Shown: positions 2,896-55,416 of the stretch, piece after piece
How positions within the stretch are numbered: the stretch's first letter is position 1
Layout: every line of letters starts with the position of its first letter
Source of the DNA: Chlorokybus atmophyticus
Taxonomy: Eukaryota > Plantae > Mesostigma and Chlorokybus algae
DNA length: 64,000 bases
NCBI GenBank assembly: GCA_009103225.1
Contig: RHPI01001168.1
Coordinates: forward strand, 125,337-189,336
Reading direction: 5' to 3'
Position numbers and translations under genes: made by a program
Notes under the pieces: model-generated
The model's input: the letters and a program-made list of their open reading frames with translations, nothing else
Database searches by the model: none
Told to the model about the DNA's origin: nothing

Positions 2896-5504
2896 GTGCG
2901 GGCTTCCGACACCGACAAGTGCCGCGAGGTCTCCCTTCTACTCACTGGTACTGCCGCTGGTTGGTTCATTAACCAACCAATTGACATTAAAACCACCTGG
3001 TCCAAGCTCCGTGATGCATTACTTTTTGCCTTTTCGGCAACACCAGCTACATCCGCCTCAGCATGGTCACATATCTTCGCCATGAAGCAACGTGAACAGG
3101 AGACAGTCACCGCGTATTTTGTGCGTTGTAATGAGACCCTAGTGTTTGCGGATGATAATTTAACGGAAAGACCAGAATTGGTTTGTTTTGGGCCACCGTT
3201 AAGCCACATTATGGAGACAGAGCAGCAACATCTAAAGCTAACACATTGGAGGAAGCTTTTGCATTAGCAAGAAGGGTGGAGGCAACAATTAATGATTTAC
3301 AGCCCAGTCAGGTGCCCAAAGTGACTTTAAATGCACAGTCAGTTGCTCCAAGACCCCACAGTCATTTTAACCGCTCACAGCCACGCCGACTTGTTGCCAA
3401 CAGTGGCGGCAACGTACGCCACTCTCACATTCGTGGCAAGTCACGTCATGATGGCTACCAGTCACATCAGCATGCACAGCAGCGTCCCATGCCGAAATTC
3501 AATCAACAGGGGGAACCAAGATGTTCTAATTGCAACAAATATGGCCATTATACCAATGATTGTCGCTTGGCAGGCCGTCGCATGCAGCAGAACGCCATGC
3601 TTACTACCGGCGAGGAGGATACGCCGCTCATCACTCATTTTGACATCCAAGCAGTGACGTCTACGACAGCAGCAGCCAGAGGCGTGTGCACCGTTTTTGG
3701 CAAGTTGGAGGGCAAAACTGTGAATGTTCTCTTGGACACCGGCTCCTCTATTTCGTCAGTGTCCTCTGCACTCGCCGCCGAGCTTGGCTTACCAGTCACG
3801 TCAGCCCCACGCATTACTGTACACTTGGGTAATGGCCACATTACCACCGAATCTGGTACTGCATGCTCTGCTACCCTCATCATTGGAGAGGCGTACACCC
3901 AACGTTGGAGGTTCCGCATCTTGCCAACACAGCTATTTGATGTAGTCCTCGGCACTGACTGGCGGAGGGCGACAGACTGCAGTGTGTCTGCGCATTTTTT
4001 GAGGTTTCCTAACGGCACGGAGACTGCGCTGTCCCCACCAACTACTGTGTGTGCTACCACTATCGCTGCTCATGTCCCACTCTCAGCAGTGCACGTACCA
4101 ATACGTGTCCGGCCTCAATCGCGGCCAGTTCCGTCTGCTGGAGTGTCAGCTCTGCTATCGGAGTATACAGCACTGTTTGAGGTGCCGGATCCTGCAAAAA
4201 CCACTGACGTTGTACAACATGTCATTGATACGAGGGGGGGGAGGCCTGTTCGCATCAGACAGTACAGGCGCTCACGGCAAGAAAACAATTTGATAGAGAA
4301 CCTTGTCATCGATATGTTGGAGGAGGGCTTTATTGTACCATCCTCTTCAGAATGGTGCAGTCAGGGGGTCCTCGTGGACAAGCCTGACGGTGGCAAACGT
4401 TTTTGCGTTGATTACAGAGCACTGAATGACGTAACAATAAAGGACAAGTACCCTCTGCCGAACATAGATTCCAGGTTCGATAGACTGCAAGGATACAACG
4501 TATTCTCAAAGATGGACGCTGCCTCGAGGTTTTTGCAGGTCCGTATGCACGCTGAGAGCCGTGCAAAGACAGCGTTTCAAACAGAATCTGGTTTGTAGGA
4601 ATGGACTGTCATGCCTTTTGGCTTGTGCAACGCGCCAGCAACATTTCAACGTCTGATGCACAGTTTTCTACGTGACCTGCCCTTCGTACTAATCTACATC
4701 GACGACATTCTGGTGTGTTCTCGAGACGAAGAGGAGCACGCTACTCATCTGCGACAGGTGTTTGAGCGGCTCACAGCAGCTGGCATCGTACTGAAGGAAC
4801 CTAAGTGCATGTTCGCTGTCTTCTCTTTACGGTTCTTAGGCTTTGTCGTGTCATCTGAGGGCCTGCGCGCTGACCATGACAAGACCAACGCCATCAGTGA
4901 GTACCCTCAGCCTCATGGTGTTTGGCTGTACGTCGATTCCTTGGCATGTGTGCATTCTACGCACGTTTTATCCCTGGCTTTGTGACCGTATCAGCGCCAC
5001 TGCGTGCTCTCGTGTGCAAGGACATTAGCTTTGAGTGGACAGAGGATTGTCAGAAGGCATTCGTTTAGTTGAAGACAGCGCTGGCTTCAGCACCGCTGCT
5101 TCGTTTCCCTGACTTCTCATCAAGCTTTGTGCTACGCACGGATGCAAGCAACTATGGGCTCAGGCTTGTGTTGCTACAATACTCTTGCGCGCACGATGCG
5201 TATGCGCCATTGTTGTTCGCGCTCGTTGACATCCGCGGAGAAAAACTACACCACGACGGAGCGCGAGTGTCTCGCGGTGGTGTGGGCGTTCAACAAGCTT
5301 CGTCCTTACCTACATAGTGCGGACGTGCAACTCAAGACCGACCATAGCGCGTTGGTGGAACTTTTGCGTACGAAGCAACCTAGAGGTCGCATTGCACGGT
5401 GGGTGCTATCCTTGCAAGCCTACACCTACACTATCTCGCACCGCCCGGGTGCATTGTGTGGTGATGTTGATGCGCTTTCGCGCGCACCCGTTGGTGATGT
5501 TTAA
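2896..5504 (+). pseudogene. Gypsy gag-protease-RT-RNase H, disrupted
   Basis: ORFs 2896-3267, 3183-4598, 4611-4985 and 5127-5504 carry successive domains; in-frame TAG at 4596-4598 and several frameshifts. Confidence 0.9.
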
Positions 5505-6139: not shown

Positions 6140-9100
6140 CAGTCTACCCTCGCTAAGAGCATACTGTTTATCCTCAGCCATCTTATGCTCTTGGCGGGGT
6201 TATTCTCTAAGCGTTTAAGAGCATAATATGCTATTGACTGCCAAGAGCATAAATATGCTATTAGCGGGGTCTTGTGTCTTATACTTTTTCGCTTTAGCAT
6301 GGTGAGCAATGAAGCTCAACAATGCCCATGTTGCTACATTCTAACTTGAATATCATACAATTGCGTTGCTATAGTCAGATGAATGCAAACAACATTCTTG
6401 CCATTTGTGTGACATGCAGCCAAGATGCTGCGGTTGTAATGCATTGTTTAATGTACATCTGCTAAGCCTGTCAATGGGCTTGAAATGTGTTTCAGTGTGT
6501 TGACTTTTGTGTATGATGCAAAGCATGCACACTTGCATGCATGTCTCATGCCTTGAACATAATGAAAGTTCGCATGTACATCAAACATCTCAGCCACTAG
6601 TCATCAACTACAAGAGGGTCTTCGGCCGTTGCACTGGTGGTGGCTGCGTGTGATGTTGATGCCTCATTGCTCGAGGCATGAAAGAACTCGTGCAAGCGTG
6701 TCTGGTGCGAGGAGCCAAATAGCTGATGACGAATCACCACATTGCGGATGTGCCGCAACGCCAACTGTAAATGCTCAGGCATAAAGCACTCACTGCCAGC
6801 CACGAAGGCCTCAATACTGCCCAAGTGCTGAAGACACCCGAATGTCGTCACAACCGGCGGTGCGCACTCACCATCATCTGCAATGTGTTATGTGAAAATT
6901 ATGAGAAGGAAAGCTACATACGGTGTGCATGCACGCGTACACACCTTCCGCGTCGGGATCGGCGGTGTCGTCCGTCGGTGGAGTCAGTGCCCCAATACTC
7001 ATCAAAATGTCCTCGTCACATTGGCTAGCCTCAGTAGGAAGATGATCATCCGCCTCGACGAACTCGTCAGCGGAGAGCATGTCAACACGTGGAATGGGCA
7101 AACGCTGCATCATCTCACCCATGTCGTGTATCACCGCGTGAATGATGCGCTCGGTGTCGGTGGGAGTGGCCTCATACCATTCCACGGGGGTAATGCCAGT
7201 CTTCCTCCAGCAGTTGGCAATGGTTGTGGCAGTCAGTTCGTCCCACGCCTCGCGATTCCACATGATGGCTTCACGCATCTGCACCTTCACTTTACTCAAG
7301 TCGAGGGTGGGGTCTGCATCATATTGCTGGAGAAGATGCTGCACAAGCTTCCTTTTGTACCTGCACATGAAGACCATCAACAACATGATGTACACCACAA
7401 CAAACTCTGACAAACAAGGGGGGTTTGGGGGGCCCCCCAACCCGAAAATTCTAATATCTTGATAGAAATAAAGGCTCTGTTTGTTCATAACACGGCATGT
7501 ATTGTGACTTACCTGGCCTTGTATGCAGCGATGATGCAGCATCCAGCATCCAAAGGTTGGACTCTGGATGTAGTGTTGGCCGGAAGAAACAGACACTTTA
7601 TGTGGCTTAGTGACAGCGTTCGGAAGCCTTCTTCCAAGCCCTGTTCTGCATACACGCAGGCATGTGTTGAGGAGTTGTCCATCAGCAGCAAGATGTGGCG
7701 GTTCTGTAGCTTCATATCTAGATTGAAGGCACACAACCACCGGCTGAAGACCTGTTGCAAGCATCACAACAGTAAGTGACATGCACAATCAATGCATATG
7801 CAGCTGCAAATGAAGTTGCATATGCACATGCACTCACCCCGGAGTTCATCCAAGCCTTCTTGTTGTAGTCGTAGTCAACGCCAATGCGGATTGGCGTCCA
7901 AGTGCTGCCAAAGGACTTCGGACGCTTGTAGGTGCCAATGATGAGGACTGGTCGCTTTTCAGAACCGTCAGCGTTGACACACAAAACTGCCGTGATTCTG
8001 TCCTTCTCTCGCTTGCCCCCTCTTGCTTCCTCCGATGCAACTACTAATGTACGACGCGGACGTGCTCTATAGAACACTCCGCTCTTATCCATGTTCCATA
8101 CATCAATGATGCGATAGTTTGATAAGATCAAAGGCAATCTACTACGAGCTGCATCCACACCCCCCGCATCTGCATCAGCTGCTTCGCCATGCAGAGTTTT
8201 CGCAGCAATTGAATGACGCTTTTTGAAACGGTGCACCCAACCTTGCGAAGCGTTGAACCCTTCTATTCCTAACCGGTTGGCAAAATCTGATGCTTTCTCC
8301 ATCAACAATGCATCAGTGACCAACGCATTGCGTGTTTTGGCCTGTGCAAACCACTCATACAATCCATCTTCTAACTTGGGATGAGCCCCAATCCGCATCC
8401 TTTTGTTTTTGGCCGCATGCTTGCCACCCACAGCCAACGCATCGGCTATTTGCTGTCGCTATTTATTGAGAAGTTTGGAGAGCGAACTCTGCTTGATAGT
8501 GAACTTCAACTCAGTTCTAATAATAGCAATCAAGTCCGCTTGCTTAAGACCTTCATTGGCGTCACACAACTCAAGGATGCGCTGCTTGTCTTTTAGTGGA
8601 AGGTTATCACGCTTGATTTGTGCGGCCATGCTGACCTACAACAACAATCACACACTACATTACTGTTTGTGCATACACAATCACACACTGCATGTACGTG
8701 CATGCACTGCATATGCGTTGCAAACCCTTACTTGTTGTGCGCCGCCAGCAGCGGCGCTGCAACAGCCTGTGACCAGCTAGCCGCCCTACAAGTTGAGCGG
8801 CATGCCCATCAACTATACCCCGCCCGCCACCGCTGCCCCAGCCTGCGTCTCCTCACCGCCGTCGCTGCCCCCAGCCTGCGTCTCCTCACCGCCGTCGCTG
8901 CCGTCCGAAGTGGCGGCGGTGATGCTTTGCAACGCTAAGTTACATTAAGATACAGTGAATTACATGCATCACGCCCATCATGCTCATCACGCTGTGCGCC
9001 GTATGCATCACACTTGCACCCCCGATACAAGCATATCCTCACTTAAACTTACGACTTTTTTAAGGAAAAAAAATATGCTCTTCGCGGTTAGTCATATTCT

Positions 9101-9229: not shown

Positions 9230-10396
9230 CTGCTGTACGCGCGCGTCGCAGGGTCGGAGCCGCGCCTCGTCATTCCGGAGCGTTACAAATCCCTTTATTT
9301 ATTAGCTTGTCATGATGACCCACCGATGGGCCATTTAGGGTTTCACAAGACATTGGGGCGCGTGCGCTCGTCGTACTTTTGGCACGGCCTCCGCGGGGAC
9401 GTGCACAATCTTGTAAAATCATGTGACACCTGTCAGCGTCACAACGATGCTTACGACAAAGCCGCGGGCTTACTACAGCCAATCATTGTTACAGAGCCGT
9501 TCGATCTGCTGGCCTGGGACATCACCGGTCCTCTGCCCACATTAGCATCCGGCAATCAGTACATCATCGTATGCTCGGAGTACGTGACACGCTGGACGGA
9601 GACGGCACCCATTGCGGTTGTCAATGCTGACACCGTGGCATCCTTTCTGCTTGCCATCATCAAGCGCCACGGCTGCCCTAAGAAGATCCTGTCAGACTGT
9701 GGCTCATATTTTACTGATGATGTGACGGCGAGCGTTGCCAGTGCCCTTGGCATCGCACAAACCTTCACCTCACCGTACCACCCTCAAACGGACGGCCTAG
9801 TGGAGCGTATGAACAGGACGCTCAAACGGACAATTTCCAAGTACATCAACGAGTTTCATAACAATTGGGACTCAATTTTGGGGGCTGTGACCTTTGCCTA
9901 TAACACCTCAATTCACGCCTGCACCGGTCATACACCTTTTCGCCTGTTGTATGGCCGAGAAGCCCAGCTGCCGCCACAGGCCCAGTTGCCCTCATTCGGC
10001 CCAGCCATTGATGGTACTGCTTGGTACCGCCAACTCACATAGGAGTTGCCCATTTTGAGGGAGGTAGCAGCTGACAACCTACGTACGGCACAAGAGCGCC
10101 AGAAGAAAAATCATGACGCCCGCCACAAGACTGTGGAGTACAACGTGGGTGACCAGGTCCTTGTGAAGACTGTGCGCATGACTTCTAAGAAGCGCAAGTA
10201 TGGCTACGATGGGGTCACTCGTCACACGGGAAAACTGAAGCCCAGATGGTCCGGACCTTATATAGTGTTGGAACGCATCCGCCCCAACACATATAAACTC
10301 GAGAGGAGGGACTACACACCAGGTGCAAGGAAGACCAGTAACAAGCAACATGTTTCTCACCTGACGCCTTATTTCGAGCGTAGCTCTCCTTTTTAA
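9230..10396 (+). pseudogene. Gypsy integrase (H2C2 zinc finger, rve core, C-terminal SH3-like region)
   Basis: RLVIPERYK..HDDPPMGHLG..CDTCQ; AWDITGPL; ILSDCGSYF; YHPQTDGLVER; YNVGDQVLVK..KLKPRWSGPY. One TAG at 10040-10042. No chromodomain seen. Confidence 0.9.
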
Positions 10397-11985: not shown

Positions 11986-13217
<1,232 letters not shown>

Positions 13218-16890: not shown

Positions 16891-17087
16891 ATACCTTTCT
16901 CGGCCTTTTGGCTAAGATCAAGTGTAGTATCTGTTCTTATCAGCTTAATATCTGATACGTGGCCCATCGGGTCACAATGATATTAAACTAATTTGTTTGG
17001 GTGGGGGTCTCATCTGGGTGGGCTTGCTCACCCGAGGCCCCCGGCGTCGCCTCAGCATTGCACTGCCGCAGAGGATGGCGCAGCCCA
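16891..17087 (+). ncRNA. U2: U2 spliceosomal snRNA
   Basis: atacctttctcggccttttggctaagatcaagtgtagtatctgttcttatcag matches the plant-type U2 5' end. Branch-pairing GTAGTA at 16924-16929, Sm-like site near 16990-17000, 3' stem with gcattgcac loop. Confidence 0.97.
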
Positions 17088-17810
17088 CCCCTACCCAGGG
17101 GACCCCACATCACTCCACACACCAACCCCATAAACACCACATCCCATGCGCGCACGGCACGCCCATGCATACACCCAGCCAAACGCACACGAGCCAACAC
17201 ATGTGTGACAACTAAAAGCGAGACGGTCAACCTCACCGCAGCGGACGCATCGCCTCACAGTCAAAGACACAAGAAAGGTGATCAGTAGTATATACGATAT
17301 CAACCCACTCATGAGGGTAGCAGCCACCACCGTGGCATTTTCGCTAAACAACAGTAGTGTCTTGAACACTTTACCCAAGAGTTGCGTATGCGGTTAGCGC
17401 ATGACTTGTGTGCGCAAAGCATGGTGTGCATCCATTTATACTTTATGCAGCCTGACGGGGAGGACTGTCATCGGACAAATATAGTTAAAGCATGAGTGAG
17501 CGCACCGACATAACAGCAATCACAGCACATCCAACTTGCACAGCGCCATTGCTCGCGCGTGCGTCAGCGCCCAACCTTTATCATCCACGACATATACCTA
17601 TAAGTTTATGTTCTATTTGTGAACCACCACTACTGTATCATAAAGGAGTGAAGCTATATGTTGGCACATATGCATGACACCCTATGCTTGCGGACTACCT
17701 AGCATACTATCTCTTGTACACTACAAGGAGACCATAAAAGCAATGACATTGTAATGGAGGATCCGGGGCTAGCTGCCTTCTCCCAAGTCACTCATAATCC
17801 CTCTGCCCGC

Positions 17811-18505
17811 TCCATCAGCAGCAAGATGTGGCGGTTCTGTAGCTTCATATCTAGATTGAAGGCACACAACCACCGGCTGAAGACCTGTTGCAAGCATCAC
17901 AACAGTAAGTGACATGCACAATCAATGCATATGCAGCTGCAAATGAAGTTGCATATGCACATGCACTCACCCCGGAGTTCATCCAAGCCTTCTTGTTGTA
18001 GTCGTAGTCAACGCCAATGCGGATTGGCGTCCAAGTGCTGCCAAAGGACTTCGGACGCTTGTAGGTGCCAATGATGAGGACTGGTCGCTTTTTAAAACCG
18101 TCAGCGTTGACACACAAAACTGCCGTGATTCTGTCCTTCTCTCGCTTGCCCCCTCTAGCTTCCTCCGATGCAACTACTAATGTACGACGCGGACGTGCTC
18201 TATAGAACACTCCGCTCTCATCCATGTTCCATACATCAATGATGCGATAGTTTGCTAAGATCAAAGGCAATCTACTACGAGCTGCATCCACACCCCCCGC
18301 ATCTGCATCAGCTGCTTCGCTATGCAGAGTTTTCGCAGCAATTGAATGACGCTTTTTGAAACGGTGCACCCAACCTTGCGAAGCGTTGAACCCTTCTATT
18401 CCTAACCGGTTGGCAAAATCTGATGCTTTCTCCATCAACAATGCATCAGTGATCAACGCATTGCGTGCTCTGGCCTGTGCAAACCACTCATACAATCCAT
18501 CTTCT
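17811..18505 (-). mobile_element. Internal fragment of the same pogo transposon (no TIRs seen)
   Basis: Near-identical to 7678-8372 including the intron; encodes WNMDESG where the full-length copy has WNMDKSG. Confidence 0.93.
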
Positions 18506-33513: not shown

Positions 33514-36500
33514 ATGCCACATACCGGCGATCGCTGCTGCTGTCTGGCACGCCAAGTAGTTTCCCCAAGCTTCAAAGGCAGTAACAACACGCCGCCCGCT
33601 GGCGAAGCCGCCGCCGCCGTGACTGCCACCCACATGGACAACAATGTCCGGACGTCCACTGACGCAAAACCCAACCCGTGGCTAACTAACTCCGCTGTGG
33701 TTAGCTTATCACCAGATTTCGACAGATGTTTGATTCAAGCTCACAGACCCCGCTTTAAACAGGTAGATTTCCATGTAAGGTCGGGATATACAGTGTGCTC
33801 GGTAAGAATTGAAGCATCACTAACGGAGCCAAGTAAGCATGATCGTGCTCGCTATTGTGTGCAGCGCAGATCTGAACTCCTACGTGGCAGCTTCAAACGA
33901 CGGTGGCGGCGGCAGTGGTGTGGTCATAGTGGGTGTTGACGCTCTTAACGTGTCGGTGTGAAGTGGTGAAGCACTGCCTCAAAAGCAATCTGTCATTGCC
34001 CTTTTCAGGCAGCTGTGACAGTGGGCAACTGTCCAGTAGTGGGCCATGCAGCCAGTTGCAGTGGTCTGTGGCTGTGCTTACTTGTAGACCCAGACTGCAT
34101 AGTCTAGCTGGTGAAGAGGGTCGTGGTTGCTGTTTGGTGCTGCCATGCTGGACCTGCCTTGCGGCGTCTGCTCGCAGCATAGGGTCGGCCTTACACTGCA
34201 ACTGGCTGCGACAGAACCCGGGTTGGGTGCAGCTTCACGGTAGGTGTCCGTTACTTAATGCTGACAAACGTGTCTGAGAACGGTTGTATGGCATAACTCG
34301 TTGGATTTAGTCGTAAACAATGGTCGTACCTTCCTACTGTGTATACCTTGCACATTCATTATATGATGGGCAATCGCAGTTAGCATGCATGTGATGCACA
34401 TGCATGCGCACTTGGCTGTAGAACGCCTGCCGATGCAGTGTCTGCCAATTGTGGTGGCACATACACGTGCATATGCTGCCACTAGTCAACTGCACGCTGC
34501 ACTGAACTTGCTGATAGAACTCGATATCTGCACGATGCTGATTGAACAATCATGGTAGAAACATTGTCGGCTCACCTGCGACGTACAGTTGAACACAACG
34601 CTTATACTTGGGACACACATTATGGACAACATAGTGGAACTTGCACATCTGGCGATCACAGCTGTTACTGTTGTTGTTGGTATGCAGACTGGTTGGACAC
34701 TTGCATCATGCGAATGCACGTAGAAGTGTGAAATAAAACACTTCTACGTGCATTGGCATGATGTCCAACCAGTCTGCTATGTACCCGGCTCAGCAGTTAC
34801 TCATTGTGTACCACATCACAGTTCATCGCGTCATGGGTACGGATGTAGTACCTCCAGGTCACACCAGAGAGAGGGGCTCAGCTTCCAGCCGCCATCACAT
34901 AAAGGCAGCAGGTTACGAGCGCCATGTAGGAAACCCGATCATGCAAAGCTACGATGGAGGTTGCAAGTAGCCAAGCAGGATGAGTCACTCACCACCGCTT
35001 TTGCAACAAGGTTCAAGTCGCTTCTGTTGCAAGACCCTCCGAAGCACGCGTCGCCAGAAAAGCACAATGCACCGCCCGCAGACAAGACACCTCCCAAAGA
35101 CAGGTTTGGTTGAGCAACGGTTACTGCCATATTTTAAGGCTCTGAGGCCATGCAGCACTGGGAGGAGTGAGAAGTCGGTGTTCAACTTGATCTCTAATGT
35201 AATGCAGGAGTATGCGTATACGAGTGGCATCTGAGAGGCACATAGCAACTGAGAAGGAAGAGCTCGCAGCTGTCCTGTTGAATCGTCTTCCAAGCAAAGA
35301 GGCGCGCAAGGACTTTCTCATGTTGTGCTCGTACGTGCGCTGTTTCTAGACTGCGCTTGGCTGACTGCTTGCAAGAAGTGATTGGCAGCAACTGACTAAG
35401 CATGTGGCAGGTCAGTGGAGTCCATCTTGCATGAAGAGCACCGCTCCATATTGGAGTGGCTGATGATGCAGCTCTCTCGGCACAGCACTGACAGGTCCGC
35501 AGCTGCCGGCATCCTGAACAGAGTACGGCCGCAAGAGCTGTGCGAAGATGGCCTTGAGTACGAGGATGAGTTGGGAGGTGACGTCAATGGGGCTGTAACT
35601 CCAGCTGAGCTCGTCAATGCAGTCACGGAAACTGCGCAGAAGCTGTTCAGTGAATTGAGTGGAGAAAATGGCAGCGAATCACAGACTGATGGCGTCACCA
35701 AAGATGCCAAGAACAACACATCTGAAAGGTACATAGTCAGTGTTTTGTGGTTATACCTCGCTTGAGTCAACGTTCCTGACGAGCTAAACGTTCATGGCCA
35801 GTGATGCAGCAGACGATTTGGAGGCTGCCTTTGTGCAACTGTTGACTCGAGCCAAGTACTTGCCACTGTCGCCAAGAGATCTCGATGTGGCAGCAGCATT
35901 GAATGAGGACTACCTGCTGACCTTACCTGTTGAGATTGATCAACGAGGGTCGTCCTCCAACGTGCTAATCTACCGGTATGGTACACCAGCATGTACGCAG
36001 TTGACATTGAGCCTTTGGCTTGGTACATGCCCAGGCCTTTTCACGAATAGACACTGCAAACCGTGGTTGAAGCGTACGAGTCCACTCCTGTCCTGATTTT
36101 TGTTTGTGTCCTGCAGGCGTGGCTACTCAGCGGTTTATGATGGAGGACGGTTGCTGGGCCAAAAGTTGGATCACCTGCAAGCCGCAGGAGTGCGGTTGTT
36201 GTTCAACGTAGTGGCGTTCCCGGTTTACAGTGTCGGGCGCTGGTTGGTAGACACATGGCGCATCGCCAAAAAGACCGGAGAGCTATGGGGCTGGGCACGC
36301 GGGCTTGAAGCCTGGCTGGACAGGAATGTCTCCAGCAATGTGACAGACGAAGCCTATGATCCGCTGAAGCCAAGATACCTTGCTAGCTTGTCCTCTGCTG
36401 GTGAGCTTATGGCAGTATAGGTTCATGAACTCTTATGTGGTTGCATTAGCTCCGGCTAAAGTAAAGGTATCCAAAGGTATGCAAGTGAAGGTATGTTGTG

Positions 36501-37867
36501 CAGGCACACGAGGTAGGTGGCTTCGGCGCTTAATGATCAACATCGGGTTGCTGCCGGAACCGCGAGGGGGGGAGGTTTCGGCCATCGCCGAAGCGTACTC
36601 TGACCCTGCTGCGCGTGCGAGGCCGCAGTATGTGCAACGCATCTCGCTGCGGGAGCTGTTTGAGCGCGTGTGCGAGAAGGACGATCGCTCTTTCTTTACA
36701 CGCCTTCGGCAAGGACTGGAATGCTTCTGGCAGGAGACGCGGCTTGAAGAACCTGCCTTCAAAGAAGTTGTTGTGATGTATCGTAAAGGCACCGCACAGG
36801 ATCAGAGCAACCTCAGCCAGCATCCGGACTACTCGGGCGTGTCCAACTTCTACGTGATGGCGTACAAGGACATCCCCATGGCGGATTTGAAGGTTGTCTT
36901 TCCGGACAACAGATTGCGCTTCAGGATTGCAGATGTCATAAGGGTGGACCTGTCCGTAGCGGCCGGTCTGTTCCTGGCAGCATACCCATTCCGGTTCCGC
37001 AATCCGGACTCCCTGCAAGCCCTCGCGCTCGATATCGCCGCCATCTCCACTGTTGTCCTGTGGGGCGGACGAGCGCTGCTGGAGTTCAAACGCTCATGGG
37101 ACAGGTAATACTGGCATCTCATCAGCCAGTAATTACACACCGAACAGTTGTAGTAATCTTGCACAAGGCAGCACTGTCACCTTTGTTGGCATCAATGAGG
37201 CTGAATGCCGCACTGACTTGCAACTTACATGTCACAGTCATAGTGTAAGTGTTGAAACTTTGATGTCGCTCGTATTATTGGATGCATGCATATCAAAGAA
37301 AACAGAACGATGATTCTGTGGGACGACACTGAGTGCGGGAGATCTTCATGCGTGTTTTATGAAGTGGTGCCAAGTTGGAACGTTGGCTATCTTGGTGTCC
37401 TGAGCATACACACCGTTCGCAGGTACCAGTTGTTCAACAACAGGACGCTGTACGAGAAGACCGTGGCTAGCAGTTTTGGCGTGGTTCACGTGCTGGTGGA
37501 CGCTTCAGAAGACCAGCAATTCAAGCTGGTGGTGACTGCGTACTGCATGCTGCTTCAGGCCGAGCACGCGTTGTCCGCGCAGGAGCTCGCGTGGCGATGC
37601 GAAACCTTTCTTGCAGAGGCCTTCCTGGAGAATGTCACATTCACCGAATGCGAACCGGTGGAGGCTTTGCTCAGGCTGGGCCTGGCGGAGCTTGTTCCTG
37701 TTGTGAATGGTGATGCCAATGGTGTTGATGAGTACACGCACATCCCGGAATGGGAGAAGAAGTATCGCGCACTGCCGCTGGCGCGGGCGCGCACTCAGCT
37801 GCAATCGCATTGGATGCGGCTGCTGCAGATGCCAACGCTCGAGCTGGCGTCCTTGCACAAGCAATAA
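33514..37867 (+). CDS. DUF3754 / TMEM143-like membrane protein (plant long-form type); 5' extent uncertain
   Basis: ESILHEEHRSILE; LSPRDLDVAAALNEDYLLTLPV; RRGY..KLDHLQ; LEEPAFKEVVVMYR; YKDIPMADLKVVFPD; YQLFNNRTLYEKT. The conserved part is ~35220-37867. Confidence 0.8.
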
Positions 37868-45809: not shown

Positions 45810-48800
45810 TTACCAATCGTGCATATCGAGTAGACACCATGCTGCAAGCATGTGCAACTCTTGGAACTCCTTCATGTTTTCCTGCCATTCACTTCATGTC
45901 ACTACACATTCACCAATGTCCACATGACACTCAAAGCTTGTTGCACTGCTCTGCATGCACGACAAACTACCTGGAGGTTTTCCATTGTCACATAGAAACG
46001 GAAGAGCGTGTCTCGCGGCCATACGGCCTCCTCTTCCACGTTTGTTATTGCCCACTCCAGCTGCCTCAAAATCTGAGGCCTGCAGAAAAAGGGCAACCAA
46101 CACAACATGAACACATGACCACAGCACCAACACATGACTCAAATGAGATCAGAAGCTTGTCACGCGAAGTCAGTAAGCACAATGTAAAAACTCACCACTC
46201 CTCCTTTTCGTTCTTTTCTGCGAGCTGCGCCGCGGCTGCAGCGGCCCGATTCGGCAAGTCTTCAAATAGAGTCACGACGCTATTCTTGCGTGATGAGTAC
46301 CTTGAGCTGTTAACAGAAGAAAAGAGAACGAAAGAAAGTAAGAAACCCAACTTGCAGCTGAGATACTGAGATACTTTGTACACAGTGCACGGCATGTTGT
46401 TTTCAACACGTCTCGTGCAAAGGACTTACATGTGTTGAAGCAACTGGAGTTGACTTCACATTGTGTGACAGCAAATGTTACATGCCATCACTCTGACACA
46501 ACAGCAAGTCTCACGCACAAGCATCATTTCTCATACGAACCCAGCCACACCACAATACAACAACACCAGAACAGCATGCATCCCATCAGTCCGTCACCTG
46601 TGCTCGCCGTCCCCGTCGCGTCCCGTCGCCACCTCCCCCTCCTCGTCCAGTGCGGGCACGCCTCCACCAAGCGCGGTCGGCGGCATCGGCAGCGGCGGGA
46701 CAACGTGCGCGTGGCCGTCACCGCCGCCCGCACCGTGACCCGGCAGACCCACCTGAGAGCATGGTCACAAGCATAAGACAAAGGTGTTATTGCGTTGCTT
46801 GTTGTAATGACACTGTGTTGTAAAGTGCAATAACAGGCAACAGTACACCATATTGCTGCATTGACAACATTTTGTTGCGATGTCGCTAGTTGCAACAAGT
46901 AGCAACAGAACAACAAAGTTGCCGTCACGGTAACAACACCAAGTTGTTTATGCTTGTAAACGCAAAACACGAGCACGCAACAACATGGTGTGATCACAAC
47001 AACACAACGCTTACTATGGCCCCAGAGCGGTGATGCGCAAGTTCGCGTCGCTGGGCCATCCAATGATTGTAGTCCATGACTTCGACATTGTTGTTGTTGT
47101 TGCTGTTATTGTTGTTGGTGGTGTGGTTGTTGCTATGGCTTGTGCCCATCAAGTCCTCATCGTCCCCGCCCCACGCATCCCCGCCACCGTGCGTCCCAGG
47201 GCTGCTACCGGCACTCGACGGACGACTAGAGTTCCTTGAGTCTGCCCTTGATGACGCCCTCGACACCGACGAGTTGACTAAACCAACAAACATCAGCTCC
47301 ATTCAACAACAACAACAACAACATCAACAACGACAACTTGATATTAAGATGAAGTGCACGCTGTAACGAACTTACAGGAGCCTCTCTTCTTGCCGCTGGC
47401 GCTCATGTGGTCGTCATCTTGGCCCATGTCCATCTTGTCCATAGCTCCTCCTTCAATGATAGCTTCCGCCGCAGCAGCCTGGACACGAGAAACTGTAACT
47501 GCAATGCAACACACCCCCACACACACCTACACACCACCACACAACATGCGAGGGGTCACTCACGCGGGCAGCGGCGGCGGCGGCGGCAGCGGCGGCCTCC
47601 TGCGCGGCGGCAGCAGCAGGGTTGGAGTTCATGGTGGATGCTTTGCGGTTCTTGTTTGTTGAGCTGCCTCCACGCTGACTGGATTTCAATGTCTCCTGCA
47701 TGTGTGTGTGTGTGCGTGCGTGCGTGCGTCCGTGCAAAACGCAGCATGTTGTCATGGATGCATGGCTGACTACACCCTAGTGCGTGTGTTGTGTGTGGTT
47801 TTTGTGATTGCGCGGACAGAGGCCAATATGCGATTGCTGCGACTCCGCTGGACGCTCGATCACGCAACACGAAAAGGTTGGACCGAATGTCCATGCGCTT
47901 ATGCAACGAAGCATGTGTGTGCATCAAGAGGACACAACTTGGTAGTTAGCAAAACCATCCTACAACCATCATCAAACCCAACACCAACACACACCTTGAC
48001 AGCATTGGCAGCCTCTTCAGCCTCCATCTGCTGCATCTGTGCCTTCTTCTTGTTCTGTCAGCACAGAGCAAACAGATACAACACATACTCAACATATGAC
48101 TCTATCTATGAACTTGATGAATTGCAACAACAACAACATGGACACAACTGACAACATGAGAGTTGAATGAGCGTACCTCTTTCCTCTGCTGTCTCGTAAT
48201 CTCCTCCAGCTCCTGCGCAACAGAGCTGAAGTGGCGCACCATCACGCCAACAAATATGTTGCGGAAAACAAAGCCTCCCACCCAAATCCACGACACGAAG
48301 TACGCCGCCACCACCGCCCCGTTGACCTACACACGAGTGTGATCATCAGGCTAAGTTGTTGTCAATATGGTTGTTGTTGCTGTTGTCGTTGACGACGAGG
48401 TCGCAGATGATGATGTTATGTCTCACCTTTGTTTTTACTTCCACCAAGAACCCGTACCAATGGTCAAAGGTGAGAAGCTCGAACAGCGTGGGGAACATGA
48501 ACTGGAAGCTTGCCAACCTATACTGTGAGCACAACATCAAGTAGTACAGTATTAGTAACTGCCACAGTCCATCACTCTGTATCTATAACAACGTCAGACA
48601 CGCTGATTGCTTCAGTGACTTGTTGTTGTGTCCAACTCTGCTTCTCTTACCTGAGACTGGAGCGTTGGGTCCCTGCTGCGGACATAACCAACAAACAGCA
48701 TGACGCCGAAAACAGCGTAGATGTAAAGCACGATTGCCAGCAGCATCATGATGAAAGTCATAGACTGGAACGCCTCCCAGAGGGTCCTCACGATCACACG

Positions 48801-50933
48801 CAGACTCTGCACGTGCAACACCACACATGAGGCACATGCTGCGCGCTTGTGTCTGTGGGCATGTGTGTACTTGTGCAGTAACATGGCAACACGCGCGTGT
48901 AAACGTGCACGTGCATGTTGGTATTGATGTGTGCTTGTTGGCGTGTGTGTATTTGTGTGTTGGTGTATGCACGCAAACTCACCCGAAACCTGGCAATGAT
49001 CTTCAATACTCGCAACACCCGAAAGATCTTGAACTACACGCAACAACAAGTCAGCCAAGGCTCATGAAGACACTTGTCTACAACATCGGAGTGTCACATA
49101 CATAGGCGGCGATGCCTCCCGAGGACGAGCTCGAGGACGTGATGAACAGCGTGAACACTTCGGGGACGGCGGAGAGCGCGGTGACAGTTGCGTCGAAGAC
49201 GTTCCAACCGTCGCGCCAGAAAGCCTTGAACGAGTCCGTCATCTTTAACGCGAGCTCAAGAATGAACGCGAGTAAGATCAAGATGTCCAAGATTCTGAAC
49301 ACCTGAGAGGTGTGATCAAATGTGAGCGACAACATAGCAGGGTGATGATGGAGTTGGTGGTGATGAAGCTGATGCTGGTGGAGAATGACAATGATGATGA
49401 TGATGATGATGATGAGAATGTTGACGATGATGATACTGATTGATTCAGCGATGATGTTGCTGATGATTAGCATCACCATCAACAAGAATATCAGCCACAA
49501 CAGCAACAACGACAACAACAACATTAACGGCAGCAACACTTGCTTGCAGGGCGGTTGAGTGTCTGGATGCGTGTAGCTCAGTCTGGCACGAGACCACGAC
49601 GGCGTTGAGAACGATCATCCACGTGACCGTCGCGTTGAAGTGCCGGTGTCCCGTCATCCAATGCGCCCATAGATCGATCGGCACCTTGAGAGTGGAAAGA
49701 AGCGTTGGTCTCATAGGGCGATGGCTGCAGACTCACAAGCTTGCAACCCTATACTTATCACTGGACGGTTGGTAAAGGCGAGATAGCAGCTAACCAATCT
49801 GTACACAGAAAATAACAAGCATACAGATATATACAACTACTGGTCAACATGCACGCGCCAGCAGGCACGAGAGAGCATGTGTGTACGTGTGCGTGTGCGT
49901 GGGACGTCACATGTACGCACGCATGCATCAAATAACTGGCTGCAGGGATGCAGAAACATACAGACTTGACACATATACAATCACACAGACAGCTCCATCC
50001 CCTCACCCAATGACTCTTCCTCAGTCTCGCAAACCTCCTCGTTGCCTCCAGATCAAAGCCGATCCCTCCTCCTCCTTCGCCATCCTCCCCTCCGCCCCCA
50101 TCTTCCCCTCCCCCGCTACCGCCCCCTCCCCCCCCTCCCCCGCTGCGACGGAACAGCTTGAAGTCGACCAGCTGACGGGGACGCTCGCGGAGCTGGTGGG
50201 AGAAGGCGTCGGGGTCGAGCATCAGGTCGCGACTGCAGTGAGATGTTGGTAACATGCATCTCGTGTTGTTGACATCTTGTATGGGCAAATACATACATAC
50301 CGCATGCCGCTGAGTACACATGTTACATACTTGGTGATTTGCTTATAGTGTGTATTTTACACGCGAGAATACTTGCACAACAAGTGCAGGGCGAATCATC
50401 ACGCAAGCACTGCGTTGGCTACATGTCACACTTAGGTGTCTTATACAGATTGATGCATGTGAGTCGCTATTATGGGAGGACTAAGAGCACCACTCATTGC
50501 GTGCCTTGTGAATGCGGGGGCGATGTTGGGGTCACCCACGACGAGGCTCTTCTCGGCGAGTTGAAACTCCTCAATGAGGCGCCCACGGAAGAGCGCTGTC
50601 CTCTTTGCCAAGTCCTGATTGAGAGAGCAGTAAGTGTTGTTGTTGCATGCGTCACATATGTGGAGATTGCAATCCTGTGTACTAGTTGGATCAGCAACAT
50701 GTGGCAATGTCAAACTGACTCCAACAGCAGCAGTTGATGTCAGTAGCTGTAGTGAAATGTTCGGTTGAGGTATGCCTCTAAAGGATGACAACTTCGCGGA
50801 GAACCGTTGATCTTCATAACTACTTATTTCATGTGATGTTAACAGAAGCCAACAGCGCGCCTGCTCATACCTGCAGCGTGCCGGCAGGCGAGAACCCCGC
50901 CGCAGCGGCCCCAAAGGCTGCCGCCGCCGCCAT
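45810..50933 (-). CDS. CATSPER2: CATSPER2-like 6-TM cation channel subunit, multi-exon
   Basis: N-term FRGRLIEEFQL, QLVDF, LLSRL, LWAHW; S2-S3 FILELALK..FWRDGWNVFD; S4 FKIFRVLRVLKIIARFR; S5 SMTFIMMLL; pore LTFDHWY; S6 FVFRNIFVGVMV; C-term VWPRDTLFRFY..ENLQENMKEFQEL. These match recalled human CATSPER2 motifs (RSRLIDTF, LLSRL, SMTFLLMLL, TLDHWY, VWPRDSLFRY). Confidence 0.88.
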
Positions 50934-53051: not shown

Positions 53052-55416
53052 TCACGTCCCTTCAGCCAGTTCATGATGACTCTGTTGAGATCGTTCAACT
53101 GCTGTCAGAGTTTCTGGCGTGTACTCGTCCTCATCCTCGTCCTCATTAACGTGGTCAATGGTTGCGCCCTCGGCACCAGCATTGTCTGCACCGTCATCAT
53201 CATCAGCAGCTTCAGCTTCATCGTCTTCATCTGGATCTTCTTCATCATCATCATCCTCATCGTTCTTAGGCCGGTTGACATTTCGCACAAGACGAGGCAT
53301 GCCATCCTCATCATCGTCCTCTCCTGAAAAGTCAAACAGGCAAAGTGATCAAGTAGGTGTGTGCTGGCTTCTGAAGCTCTTCTCAATGCCACTTCATACA
53401 TATGCACAAGCGAGCAACAAAGAAAGCAAGAGTGTGTGTGAGTGGTTTACCGCATGACTGTATGAAGACCCGCACAATACACGCGTGTTGTAACAACGCA
53501 ACGTTTCAAAGCATGCAATATCGCTTGCCTTCCGAATAAGCCTCTTCAGTAGATGCATATCTGGCTTCCGCGAGGAATTTTGCCTGCTCAGCAACGACGT
53601 CCGCACCATTGCTGCACGCAGCATACGCATCCAGCAATTCCCTATGTCACAATTTTCAGTTTACGCTACAGCATAACAACCCACAAGGACACAAAATGGC
53701 ACAAGGACACTCACTTGTTGAGGGTGATGAACCCATGACCCCACTTGAACTTCTCCAGCAGAAGCTCTGCCCAATCAGGCCTTCCACTATAAGAAGCCAA
53801 TGTAAATTCATGTAAGTCATGGCTTCTACAAAATACGAGAGATACCATGGACGGTTACGAAGGGTTATGCTTGCTCACCATATGTACATTGCGGCTGCCA
53901 ACGCTTCCACGCACGACAGCTTGCAAGGGCGGCCGTAGTTTATTGGGTTGGCGGCCACCAACCAAGGCACTGCAGAGACGACAAACAACCGTGGGCACAC
54001 CCCAAACACGCAACCAATGGATGACAAGCAACAAGGTTAACTGCGCCACAACAACATACATAAGCGCGGTGCAGGGGTCTTGATTCGTGTGAACGGGACA
54101 TCATCGAGCTTCGCCCACGAACAGTCCACAACCGCAAGGCCCGCCTCCTCCATGAGTGCCTTGTCCTCGCGTGACACGCATCGCGTCCCGGTTGGACTGC
54201 ACACAAACGCATGTTGATGAACCTTCTGGTTCCATAGGTGTGCGCGAAAGGAGGTAACTAAATGACCAAAAGACTAACCTCAGTACCACGCCAGCAAAGC
54301 GCTGATTTATGCGCAGCTCCTGCATGCAACTCACACCATCAGCTTGGCACGCACCCACCCACGCACCCACGCACGCATTGCTTTCATGCGCAGGCATCAA
54401 AGGATGGTTGTGCGACGCTGTGAACGCAACGAAAACACTGCTCCTGGCAATGTTGGTGTGTACCCTCACAAAGCCGAGCCGCGCCAGCTTGCGACCAGTG
54501 CACTTCTTTGAATCGCACTGTCCAAAATCCTGTCCAGCAACAACTGACCTCGGTAAGTCTGAGACATCACACGCACGCACACAGCCACCAGCTGTGTTCC
54601 ACGTTAACATGCACGAGCGTACGACTAGGACCACACAAAGCTGATTGAGCTCAAGAAGAGGCTCACCCACATAGCTAAGCGTAAGGGAAACTTGGCACGA
54701 GGTGCTTGTGCTGCATATCAATTAATATGGCATGTTAGTGAACCAACCTCACAGCACTGGACATGGTGATTTATAAAGAGAAAAACATCAGTACCTGGGT
54801 CAACGTCATCAACGTTGCCATTAGTAAACGCCCCTCCACCACCCTCCCTGCGCTCACCGGCGTGAGCTGCTTACATGCGCATGCACATGGACATGCGTAC
54901 ACGCACATGCAAGGACTTGCACCAGAATCATCTAAACAACACGTGCTTGATTGAGGCAAGCACTGCCTGCATAACAAGACGACACTGTGCACGTATGGAA
55001 GTATAGTCAGCACACGCAACGCCCATGTGAAATGATGTACTTTGATAGATAGGCGTATTATATCTTCACAAACAATGGTCACCAAACTGGTTGCAACGAG
55101 CACGTAGCTATTAGGCTTGTTCTTGCCTGCTGACAACCAGACAAGAACAAGCTATCACTCGATACTCGGGGACACACGAGCTGCATGCAGACAGAGCGCA
55201 ACACACATACGGTGACATGGTGTTCCACACGTTCCGTATGTGATCATCTTGACATGAACCAGTTGTGAAGCAGAAATCAAACATTCACCCCTTGTGCAAT
55301 ACACAAACCGATCCATCCACCCACCAATTGGCCGTCTGGCGTTCTCTGCTCCACAGTTTAGCTCCCCGCCCACCACTACTACAACCACCTCCTCCTCGAC
55401 CTCTTCCCTTGCCCAT
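53052..55416 (-). CDS. TSR3: 18S rRNA aminocarboxypropyltransferase TSR3
   Basis: LRLAMW|[15 protein letters not shown]; [22 protein letters not shown]; [25 protein letters not shown]; KFKWGHGF; acidic tail. Start codon inferred. Confidence 0.94.

What the first reader, a model, noticed from the sequence alone, without database searches (positions are those of the whole stretch)
45810..50933. Apparently intact CATSPER2 orthologue in a green-lineage genome
Seen: exon-by-exon colinear similarity to CATSPER2 that extends beyond the generic channel core. It covers the N-terminus (FRGRLIEEF, LLSRL, LWAHW), an Arg/Lys S4, the Asp pore TFDHW (48457-48471) and the CATSPER2-type tail VWPRDTLFRF. The junctions I traced from the start through S6 are in phase with no stops. 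Established: CatSper is the flagellar Ca2+ channel of animal sperm, works as a CATSPER1-4 heterotetramer with auxiliary subunits, has been reported patchily in a few non-animal eukaryotes, and is not known to me from land plants or Chlamydomonas. Inference: this alga may retain a CatSper complex controlling zoospore or gamete swimming, a potentially undescribed green-lineage system.
Basis: partly seen in the sequence, partly recalled or inferred. Interest (0 to 1): 0.92.

Follow-up and report, generated by a model that had tools for sequence, protein, structure and literature searches.

The report
CATSPER2 sperm-channel gene in an alga
This alga carries an intact, transcribed gene for CATSPER2, one of the four pore proteins of the calcium channel that steers animal sperm tails, so that subunit is far older than animals and survives in at least two green-lineage algae.

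Summary
RNA contigs from two studies show 14 of the 16 introns spliced out; a fifteenth is shown by a 14-letter contig overhang.

The protein is a single-repeat six-helix channel. It has S4 charges K-R-R-K, an Asp pore TFDHW, and the two blocks specific to CATSPER2. These are the N-terminal FRxxLIEEF...QLVxFKxF block and the WPRDTLF tail, which starts 40 residues from the C-terminus as in mammals.

In a careful ML tree it lies inside the CATSPER2 clade (support 100/99). That clade holds mammalian, ctenophore, fungal and protist CATSPER2. The window protein is sister to an unannotated Chara braunii protein (96/97), apart from CatSper4, four-domain channel repeats and BacNav.

Three things remain unsettled:
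- Intron 2 has a GC donor, no RNA support, and is retained in the only contig that covers it.
- CatSper1 and CatSper3 were not in my tree.
- The host taxon rests on the Chara sister relation.

I did not test whether a whole CatSper complex exists. The scan had already flagged CatSper1-, 3- and 4-like and auxiliary-subunit genes on other DNA of this genome. I class this as a new member of a known kind, of moderate interest.

The parts
50871..50933 (-). Exon 1. Start codon at 50933-50931; Ala/Gly-rich first 21 codons.
   Evidence: ORF and GT donor. The exon 1/2 joint is seen in an X1 contig.
50505..50614 (-). Exon 2. CATSPER2 N-terminal block DLAKRTALFRGRLIEEFQLAE...APAFT. Proposed GC donor at 50504-50503.
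   Evidence: tblastn of 18 orthologues; the alignments of Rhodelphis P0012, Ploeotia P0023 and Paratrimastix P0014 stop at 50507. The donor is inferred from homology. It has no RNA support, and the X1 contig retains this intron.
50007..50232 (-). Exon 3. Conserved RDLMLDP...PRQLVDFKLFRR block, followed by a Gly/Glu-rich low-complexity insert.
   Evidence: tblastn against orthologues. The 3' end is joined to exon 4 by an X1 contig overhang.
49544..49684 (-). Exon 4. VPIDLWAHW motif and helix S1. GC donor at 49543-49542.
   Evidence: In the solved-structure search BacNav and CATSPER2 are the only hits.
49102..49302 (-). Exon 5. Helices S2-S3, including GWNVFD.
   Evidence: RNA joints. Pfam Ion_trans positions 35-81. 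Best solved-structure hits are CATSPER2 chains 9ubw_B at 6.5e-9 and 7eeb_B at 1.9e-8.
48983..49033 (-). Exon 6. S4 voltage-sensor helix FKIFRVLRVLKIIARFR.
   Evidence: RNA joints. K249, R252, R255 and K258 fall at every third position.
48651..48806 (-). Exon 7. S4-S5 linker and helix S5.
   Evidence: RNA joints. Pfam Ion_trans positions 115-156.
48427..48522 (-). Exon 8. Pore loop with the selectivity filter TFDHW at 48457-48471.
   Evidence: RNA joints. T-x-D-[QHRND]-W is found in all 38 CatSper2-clade rows and all 28 mammalian CATSPER2.
48177..48326 (-). Exon 9. Helix S6 and the start of the cytoplasmic C-terminal region.
   Evidence: RNA joints. Pfam Ion_trans positions 204-239.
46196..48054 (-). 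Exons 10-15: 47995-48054, 47564-47695, 47376-47478, 47015-47277, 46598-46752 and 46196-46306. A long low-complexity cytoplasmic linker rich in Ala, Ser, Asn and Gly.
   Evidence: RNA joints. Exon 11 is masked as a repeat in the tool output; I recovered it from the contig length and an X2 overhang.
45971..46079 (-). Exon 16. Start of the CATSPER2-specific C-terminal domain (VWPRDTLFRFYVTMENLQ).
   Evidence: The top solved-structure hit of 177,635 sequences is mouse CATSPER2 7eeb_B residues 544-565. The motif starts 40 residues from the C-terminus, as in 23 of the 29 listed orthologues.
45810..45881 (-). Exon 17, coding part. End of the tail (ENMKEFQELHMLAAWCLLDMHDW) and the stop codon. The 3' UTR runs on below 45700.

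Best explanation
This is an intact, spliced and transcribed orthologue of CATSPER2, one of the four pore-forming subunits of the CatSper flagellar Ca2+ channel.

Shown here:
- One six-helix Ion_trans repeat.
- An S4 helix with four regularly spaced K/R residues.
- A pore loop carrying the Asp of the T-x-D-x-W filter.
- The N-terminal and C-terminal cytoplasmic blocks found in CATSPER2 from mammals to protists and in none of the CatSper4 or multi-domain channels I compared.

Inferred:
- The protein assembles with CatSper1-, 3- and 4-type partners into a heterotetramer, each subunit giving one Asp to a DDDD ring that selects Ca2+.
- The conserved 40-residue tail and the N-terminal block are assembly or regulation surfaces.
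- The channel sits in the flagellar membrane of the alga's motile cells (zoospores or gametes) and turns a voltage, pH or chemical cue into Ca2+ entry that changes the flagellar beat.

The gene was inherited vertically from an early eukaryotic ancestor. It has been kept in at least two green-lineage algae, this one and Chara braunii.
For: - Gene model: 17 exons, 732 aa, no stops.
- Spliced RNA contigs at 99%+ identity come from two studies of the same labelled organism.
- Exon pieces map colinearly onto Pfam Ion_trans at positions 35-81, 115-156 and 204-239.
- phmmer of the spliced protein gives three colinear blocks (aa 20-88, 120-440, 665-731). E-values are 7.9e-108 for Rhodelphis, 7.1e-103 for Chara braunii and 3e-59 for stoat CATSPER2. 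The core scores 160-290 bits against CatSper2 proteins, at most 84 bits against any repeat of a four-domain channel, and 46-104 bits against CatSper4.
- BLASTP aligns aa 16-467 to stoat CATSPER2 aa 6-427, and the tail aa 688-731 to aa 489-532.
- Solved structures: the S2-S3 exon and the tail exon both hit CATSPER2 first. CATSPER2 is the best CatSper paralogue for every piece that gave hits.
- The Chara sister protein hits 7eeb_B at 4e-58, and no other CatSper chain is in its top 60.
- Careful ML tree: CatSper2 clade 100/99, window plus Chara 96/97, CatSper4 clade 100/98.
- The tail motif occurs in 29 of 38 clade members and 27 of 28 mammalian CATSPER2. It occurs in 0 of 52 CatSper4 hits and 0 of 22 multi-domain channels.
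Against: - Intron 2 needs a GC donor and has no RNA support. The only contig there retains it and meets a stop at 50443-50441, so some transcripts would not encode the full N-terminus.
- Core pieces alone are not CatSper2-specific. The S5 and S6 exons hit Cav channels first and the S1 exon hits a BacNav first. The pore exon gave no hit.
- CatSper1 and CatSper3 sequences could not be fetched for the tree.
- I did not test partner subunits, localisation, conductance or the cell type that expresses the gene.
- The window's own protein was not found in either protein collection.
Confidence: 0.8

Rival explanations
1. It is a CATSPER2 orthologue that works without a canonical CatSper complex, for example as a homotetramer, with fewer partners, or in a non-flagellar membrane.
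For: I verified no partner subunit; they are known only from unchecked scan notes. The literature says nothing is known about CatSper regulation outside animals (PMC6660944).
Against: The CATSPER2-specific N- and C-terminal blocks are conserved as strictly as in animals, which argues for conserved partners. Cyanophora appears to have both a CatSper2 and a CatSper4-type protein, though the species of the latter (P0259) is inferred only from its gene-name format.
Confidence: 0.1
2. It is a transcribed but functionally decaying gene. The 5' part is not correctly spliced, so the protein lacks the conserved N-terminus or is not made.
For: The X1 contig reads through the proposed intron 2 into an in-frame stop. 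RNA depth over exons 1-3 is low or nil.
Against: The whole 2199-nt frame is open. Both conserved N-terminal blocks are intact, and the junction they imply matches the spacing in Rhodelphis, P0044 and P0078 without gaps (AP..T[TS]RD). Retained introns are common in short-read assemblies. A second GC-AG intron in the same gene is spliced in RNA.
Confidence: 0.06
3. The scaffold or gene is not from a green alga. It would be contamination or horizontal transfer from a flagellated fungus, protist or animal.
For: CATSPER2 orthologues are common in chytrids and protists. I tested no flanking-gene phylogeny. The one DNA run that holds part of the stretch carries another organism label.
Against: The sister is Chara braunii at 96/97, not a fungus or animal. 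RNA from two studies carries the same organism label. Base composition is even across the 64 kb. The window also holds ordinary nuclear genes, namely an ABCE1-type Fer4_RLI exon, a DUF3754 exon and a U2 snRNA.
Confidence: 0.03
4. It is a generic single-domain voltage-gated channel (EukCat or BacNav type) that merely resembles CatSper in the channel core.
For: Some core pieces score best against Cav or BacNav chains.
Against: The clade has 100/99 support and is separate from BacNav and four-domain repeats. The CATSPER2-only N- and C-terminal blocks are present.
Confidence: 0.01

Closest known systems
Mammalian CATSPER2 (mouse chain 7eeb_B; stoat P0153)
   Same: End-to-end colinear alignment: one six-helix repeat, S4 pattern [KR]I.RVLR.LK..A.FR, pore T-[LF]-D-H-W, an N-terminal R..LI[DE].F block, and a tail WPRD[ST]LFR... 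that starts 40 residues from the C-terminus.
   Different: Only 32% identity. The algal protein has a Gly/Glu-rich insert before S1 and a low-complexity linker about 250 aa long between S6 and the tail, giving 732 aa against about 530-590. No sNHE-type partner is known outside animals (PMC6660944). Function is untested.
Chara braunii GBG79341.1 (P0041), annotated as a hypothetical protein
   Same: Nearest relative: 41% identity over 372 aa and 48% over the 81-aa tail. It is the sister in the tree at 96/97 and has the same three conserved blocks.
   Different: The Chara gene model is a single 2841-nt exon, whereas this gene has 16 introns. The Chara protein is 946 aa with pore TLDQW and tail WPKDTLF.
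CATSPER2 orthologues of protists and zoosporic fungi (Rhodelphis, Cyanophora, Paratrimastix, Gefionella, Ploeotia, Cantina, Diphylleia, Rozella, chytrids)
   Same: Same clade at 100/99 and the same N-terminal, pore and tail blocks.
   Different: They come from other eukaryotic supergroups, and most are shorter (about 450-530 aa), without the long linker.
CatSper4 family (chytrids, corals, sponge, Cyanophora-type P0259)
   Same: Single-repeat channel with an Asp pore (TQDGW). It groups with the CatSper2 clade at 95/93, apart from four-domain repeats and BacNav.
   Different: A separate clade at 100/98. It has no FRxxLIEEF block and no WPRD tail (0 of 52). It scores only 46-104 bits against the window core.
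EukCat and BacNav single-domain channels, and repeats of Cav/Nav channels
   Same: The same Ion_trans fold. S5 and S6 pieces score comparably.
   Different: The pore residue is mostly Glu. They lack the CATSPER2 terminal blocks and fall outside the clade. EukCats were reported as distinct from CatSpers (PMC6509283).

Membership tests
CATSPER2 (pore-forming CatSper subunit 2) | Single six-helix Ion_trans repeat, not a two- or four-domain channel | tested here: met
   Exon pieces map once and colinearly to Pfam PF00520 at positions 35-81, 115-156 and 204-239. phmmer finds one core block, aa 120-440.
CATSPER2 (pore-forming CatSper subunit 2) | Selectivity filter T-x-D-x-W with Asp | tested here: met
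   TFDHW at aa 334-338, window 48457-48471. The same pattern is in 38 of 38 clade members and 28 of 28 mammalian CATSPER2.
CATSPER2 (pore-forming CatSper subunit 2) | S4 helix with positive charges at every third position | tested here: met
   K249, R252, R255 and K258, then R262 and R264. They align residue for residue with stoat CATSPER2 RICRVLRSLKLFARFR.
CATSPER2 (pore-forming CatSper subunit 2) | CATSPER2-specific C-terminal domain (WPRD[ST]LF...) about 40 residues from the end | tested here: met
   WPRDTLF at aa 693, 40 residues from the C-terminus. Its top solved-structure hit is 7eeb_B residues 544-565. The motif is absent from 52 CatSper4 hits and 22 multi-domain channels.
CATSPER2 (pore-forming CatSper subunit 2) | CATSPER2-specific N-terminal blocks (F/IR..LI[DE].F and QLV.F) | tested here: met
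   FRGRLIEEF at aa 30-38 and PRQLVDFKLFRR. Both are colinear with 18 orthologues and with stoat CATSPER2. The loose form of the motif is in 25 of 28 mammalian CATSPER2 and 0 of 52 CatSper4 hits.
CATSPER2 (pore-forming CatSper subunit 2) | Falls in the CATSPER2 clade rather than with paralogues or generic channels | tested here: met
   The careful ML tree gives the clade 100/99, with CatSper4, four-domain repeats and BacNav outside it. CatSper1 and CatSper3 were not in the tree. The solved-structure searches that include all four mouse chains rank CATSPER2 first among CatSpers every time.
CatSper channel complex | CatSper1, 3 and 4 and auxiliary subunits (beta, gamma, delta, epsilon, EFCAB9) present in the same genome | not tested
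   This rests only on earlier unchecked scan notes on other pieces of the genome.
CatSper channel complex | Flagellar localisation and an alkalinisation- or voltage-activated Ca2+ current | not testable with these tools
   This needs proteomics, imaging or electrophysiology.

The most novel reading that the evidence does not exclude
This streptophyte-type alga keeps a complete CatSper complex: CatSper1-4 plus beta, epsilon, theta, tau and EFCAB9-type subunits. The complex gates Ca2+ in the flagella of its zoospores or gametes. That would be the first CatSper system in the green lineage. Together with the orthologues in glaucophytes, Rhodelphis, metamonads, euglenids, malawimonads, CRuMs and stramenopiles, it would date the complex to the last eukaryotic common ancestor, with later loss in land plants and in Chlamydomonas-type algae.
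Probability: 0.45. Interest if true: 0.75.

Novelty: new member of a known kind. Interest (0 to 1): 0.55.

Why it matters
CatSper is usually treated as a sperm channel of animals. One recent review places its origin in the ancestor of apusozoans, animals and fungi (PMC7935092).

A bona fide CATSPER2 in a green-lineage alga extends the subunit across most eukaryotic supergroups and into Archaeplastida. The supporting orthologues I found are in Chara, Cyanophora, Rhodelphis, Paratrimastix, Gefionella, Ploeotia, Diphylleia and Cantina.

It also gives plant biology a concrete candidate for the unknown Ca2+ entry route that controls flagellar beating in streptophyte zoospores and sperm. Finally, it offers a non-animal system in which to ask how CatSper is regulated without sNHE, a question stated as open in PMC6660944.

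Tried and rejected
- I could not obtain an id for the window's own protein. The exhaustive representative search with the S2-S3 exon found no identical protein. The word-indexed search with the Chara orthologue did not list it either. Full-length tool searches on the window protein were therefore impossible. I worked with exon pieces by reference and with the spliced protein in local scripts.
- Searches meant to bring in CatSper1, 3 and 4 yielded only CatSper4.
- The pore exon alone gave no solved-structure hit.
- I hoped to compare intron positions with Chara, but the Chara gene model is intronless.
- Taxon check by neighbours failed. The ABCE1 and DUF3754 exons are too short for the length-filtered homology search, and the Atlas look-up on DUF3754 gave only chance-level hits.
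- The DNA-run search found one weak holder under another organism label.
- Cai et al. 2014 (PMC4169769) is not held, and the EukCat paper's supplement is not held.
- My first reading by eye of the exon 3/4 joint as non-canonical was a coordinate slip. A script showed it is a canonical GT-AG intron.
- I rejected an upstream acceptor at about 49722, which would bring HRPMRPTLLSTLK into exon 4. It is out of phase with exon 3 and disagrees with the RNA overhang.
Full report
**Observation**

Six-frame translation showed a chain of open segments carrying channel motifs.

Contigs of two RNA data sets of the same labelled organism hold the locus: X1 from 2021 with 32% of the sampled words, and X2 from 2013 with 13%. 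That is GT..AG on the minus strand.

- One exon, 47564-47695, was masked as a repeat. I recovered it from the length of contig record 1 and an X2 overhang.
- Script-checked boundaries give 17 exons, 14 GT-AG and 2 GC-AG introns, and a 2199-nt CDS running from the ATG at 50933 to a stop codon ending at 45810. That is 732 aa with no internal stop.
- The exon 3/4 junction (50007|49684) is shown only by a 14-letter contig overhang.
- The exon 2/3 junction has no RNA support. It works only with a GC donor (AAG|GCACGC). The single X1 contig there is spliced at intron 1 but then runs unspliced from 50613 to at least 50350, through an in-frame stop at 50443-50441.
- Homology fixes that junction. Rhodelphis P0012, P0044 and P0078 read AP..T-T-RD without a gap, and the predicted product reads APAFT-S-RDLMLDP.

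**What it is**

Exon pieces map once and in order onto Pfam Ion_trans. The protein has:

- S4 charges at K249, R252, R255 and K258;
- the pore TFDHW at aa 334-338 (48457-48471);
- FRGRLIEEF at aa 30-38;
- WPRDTLF at aa 693-699.

An exhaustive search of 1.84 billion representative proteins with the S2-S3 exon returned mainly single-domain channels with a T-[LF]-D-[QH]-W pore and a C-terminal WPRD[ST]LF motif. Look-ups named them as follows:

- Chara braunii GBG79341.1, annotated as hypothetical;
- Rhodelphis, Cyanophora, Gefionella, Cantina, Ploeotia, Diphylleia, Rozella, Cladochytrium and Blastocladiella;
- Paratrimastix, annotated as CatSper2;
- annotated CATSPER2 of ctenophore, priapulid, amphioxus and salmon.

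The Chara protein's named relatives among 5.8 billion proteins are mammalian CATSPER2 at E 1e-59 to 1e-35, far ahead of Cav and Nav.

**Orthology tests**

- phmmer of the spliced window protein against all fetched proteins gives three colinear blocks: N-terminus aa 20-88, core aa 120-440 and tail aa 665-731. E-values are 7.9e-108 for Rhodelphis, 7.1e-103 for Chara and 3e-59 for stoat CATSPER2.
- The core scores 160-290 bits against CatSper2 proteins, at most 84 bits against any repeat of a four-domain channel, and 46-104 bits against CatSper4.
- BLASTP aligns aa 16-467 with stoat CATSPER2 aa 6-427, and the tail with its last 44 residues.
- Against all solved structures, the S2-S3 exon hits CATSPER2 first (6.5e-9; CatSper4 scores 0.019).
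- The tail exon's best hit of 177,635 sequences is mouse CATSPER2 residues 544-565.
- The S5, S6 and S1 pieces hit Cav or BacNav first. CATSPER2 is always the best CatSper paralogue.
- The Chara sister hits 7eeb_B at 4e-58, with no other CatSper chain in its top 60.

The tail starts exactly 40 residues from the C-terminus in the window protein and in 23 of the 29 listed orthologues, mammals among them. It is present in 29 of 38 clade members and 27 of 28 mammalian CATSPER2. It is absent from all 52 CatSper4 hits and all 22 multi-domain channels.

A careful ML tree of 66 rows under LG+C20+F+G4 gives these supports:

| Grouping | Support |
|---|---|
| CatSper2 clade | 100/99 |
| Window + Chara braunii | 96/97 |
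| CatSper4 clade | 100/98 |
| CatSper2 + CatSper4, apart from four-domain repeats and BacNav | 95/93 |

CatSper1 and CatSper3 sequences could not be fetched, so they are missing from the tree.

**Mechanism**

The shown features are the channel architecture, the voltage-sensor charges, the Asp filter and the paralogue-specific cytoplasmic blocks.

The rest is inferred from what is established for animal CatSper. There, four different subunits each contribute one Asp, and the channel lies in the flagellar membrane (PMC13674862). I infer that this protein is one quarter of a heterotetrameric Ca2+ pore in the flagella of motile cells. The strictly conserved tail and N-terminal block would be surfaces for assembly or regulation.

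The gene is assembled in X1 but not in X3 or X4 of the same study. That hints at stage- or condition-specific expression, but I could not decode the samples.

**Complex and taxon**

I could not test for partner subunits. Earlier notes of this scan, on other pieces of the same genome, flag the following genes, and only the CatSper3 note had a follow-up:

- CatSper1-like, CatSper3-like and CatSper4-type;
- beta, epsilon, theta and tau;
- EFCAB9.

The scan has therefore found this system before on other DNA of this genome. These notes are leads, not evidence.

The green-lineage origin rests on three points:

- the Chara sister relation;
- RNA from two studies under one organism label;
- a normal nuclear context, with an ABCE1-type exon, a DUF3754 exon, a U2 snRNA, retrotransposon and Tc5-type transposase remnants, and even GC content.

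No flanking-gene phylogeny was possible.

**Comparison with the literature**

- CatSper outside animals is known. Allomyces is one case (bioRxiv 10.1101/230292).
- A 2019 survey cites Cai et al. 2014 for CatSper occurring in all eukaryotic groups, and states that nothing is known of its regulation outside animals (PMC6660944).
- A 2021 review still places its origin in the ancestor of apusozoans, animals and fungi (PMC7935092).
- A 2017 review says land plants such as Arabidopsis lack it and asks for more plant species to be examined (PMC5406480).
- No held paper pairs CatSper with Chara braunii or Klebsormidium. The only two that pair it with streptophytes merely cite CatSper papers in their reference lists.
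- Subscription papers are not covered by this library.

**Verdict**

This is a real, intact, expressed CATSPER2 orthologue, and a new member of a known family in a lineage where it appears undescribed.

Noticed in passing
window 11989-13217: A perfect (CT)n dinucleotide array of 614.5 copies (1.2 kb, 100% matches). It explains the extreme GC and AT skew in that bin and the long spurious ORFs on both strands.
   Followed up: partly
window 16891-17088 (+): A full-length U2 spliceosomal snRNA gene (Rfam RF00004, 169 bits, model positions 1-192 of 192).
   Followed up: no
window 3183-4598 (+) and 9326-10042 (+): Gypsy-type retrotransposon remnants: ORFs with aspartyl protease plus the start of reverse transcriptase, and integrase (Integrase_H2C2 plus rve).
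   Followed up: no
window 17851-18495 (-) and 6874-7788 (-): Tc5/pogo-type transposase ORFs (HTH_Tnp_Tc5 plus DDE_1).
   Followed up: no
window 54101-54718 (-): An exon with the Fer4_RLI domain, probably the N-terminal part of an ABCE1 (RNase L inhibitor) gene. This is a good marker for a flanking-gene phylogeny.
   Followed up: no
window 36380-37108 (+): An exon encoding a DUF3754 domain (E 4e-21).
   Followed up: partly
window 49199: The X1 RNA contig reads G where the genome has A. This changes Val215 to Ala inside the conserved GWNVFD motif of S3. It could be a strain or allele difference, editing or an error. Six more differences lie in and around exons 1-2, in intron 2 and the 5' UTR.
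   Followed up: partly
window 49685-49732 (-), in intron 3: The frame of exon 4 stays open for 16 codons upstream of the RNA-supported acceptor (VCSHRPMRPTLLSTLK). It resembles mammalian CSQRPPLSLW and Chara ERPRPTIYATISLW. This may be a relic of a longer ancestral exon or chance. The only alternative acceptor (about 49722) is out of phase with exon 3.
   Followed up: partly
L001 10001-12841 (Chara braunii BFEA01000316.1): The Chara CATSPER2 orthologue is modelled as a single 2841-nt exon, whereas the window gene has 16 introns. This could be intron loss, a retrogene or a modelling issue.
   Followed up: no
P0259 (EukProt tig00021623_g23019.t1) and P0027: Cyanophora paradoxa has a CatSper2 orthologue (P0027). 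A protein with the same 'tig...' naming (P0259) falls in the CatSper4 clade, so a glaucophyte may also keep several CatSper pore subunits.
   Followed up: partly
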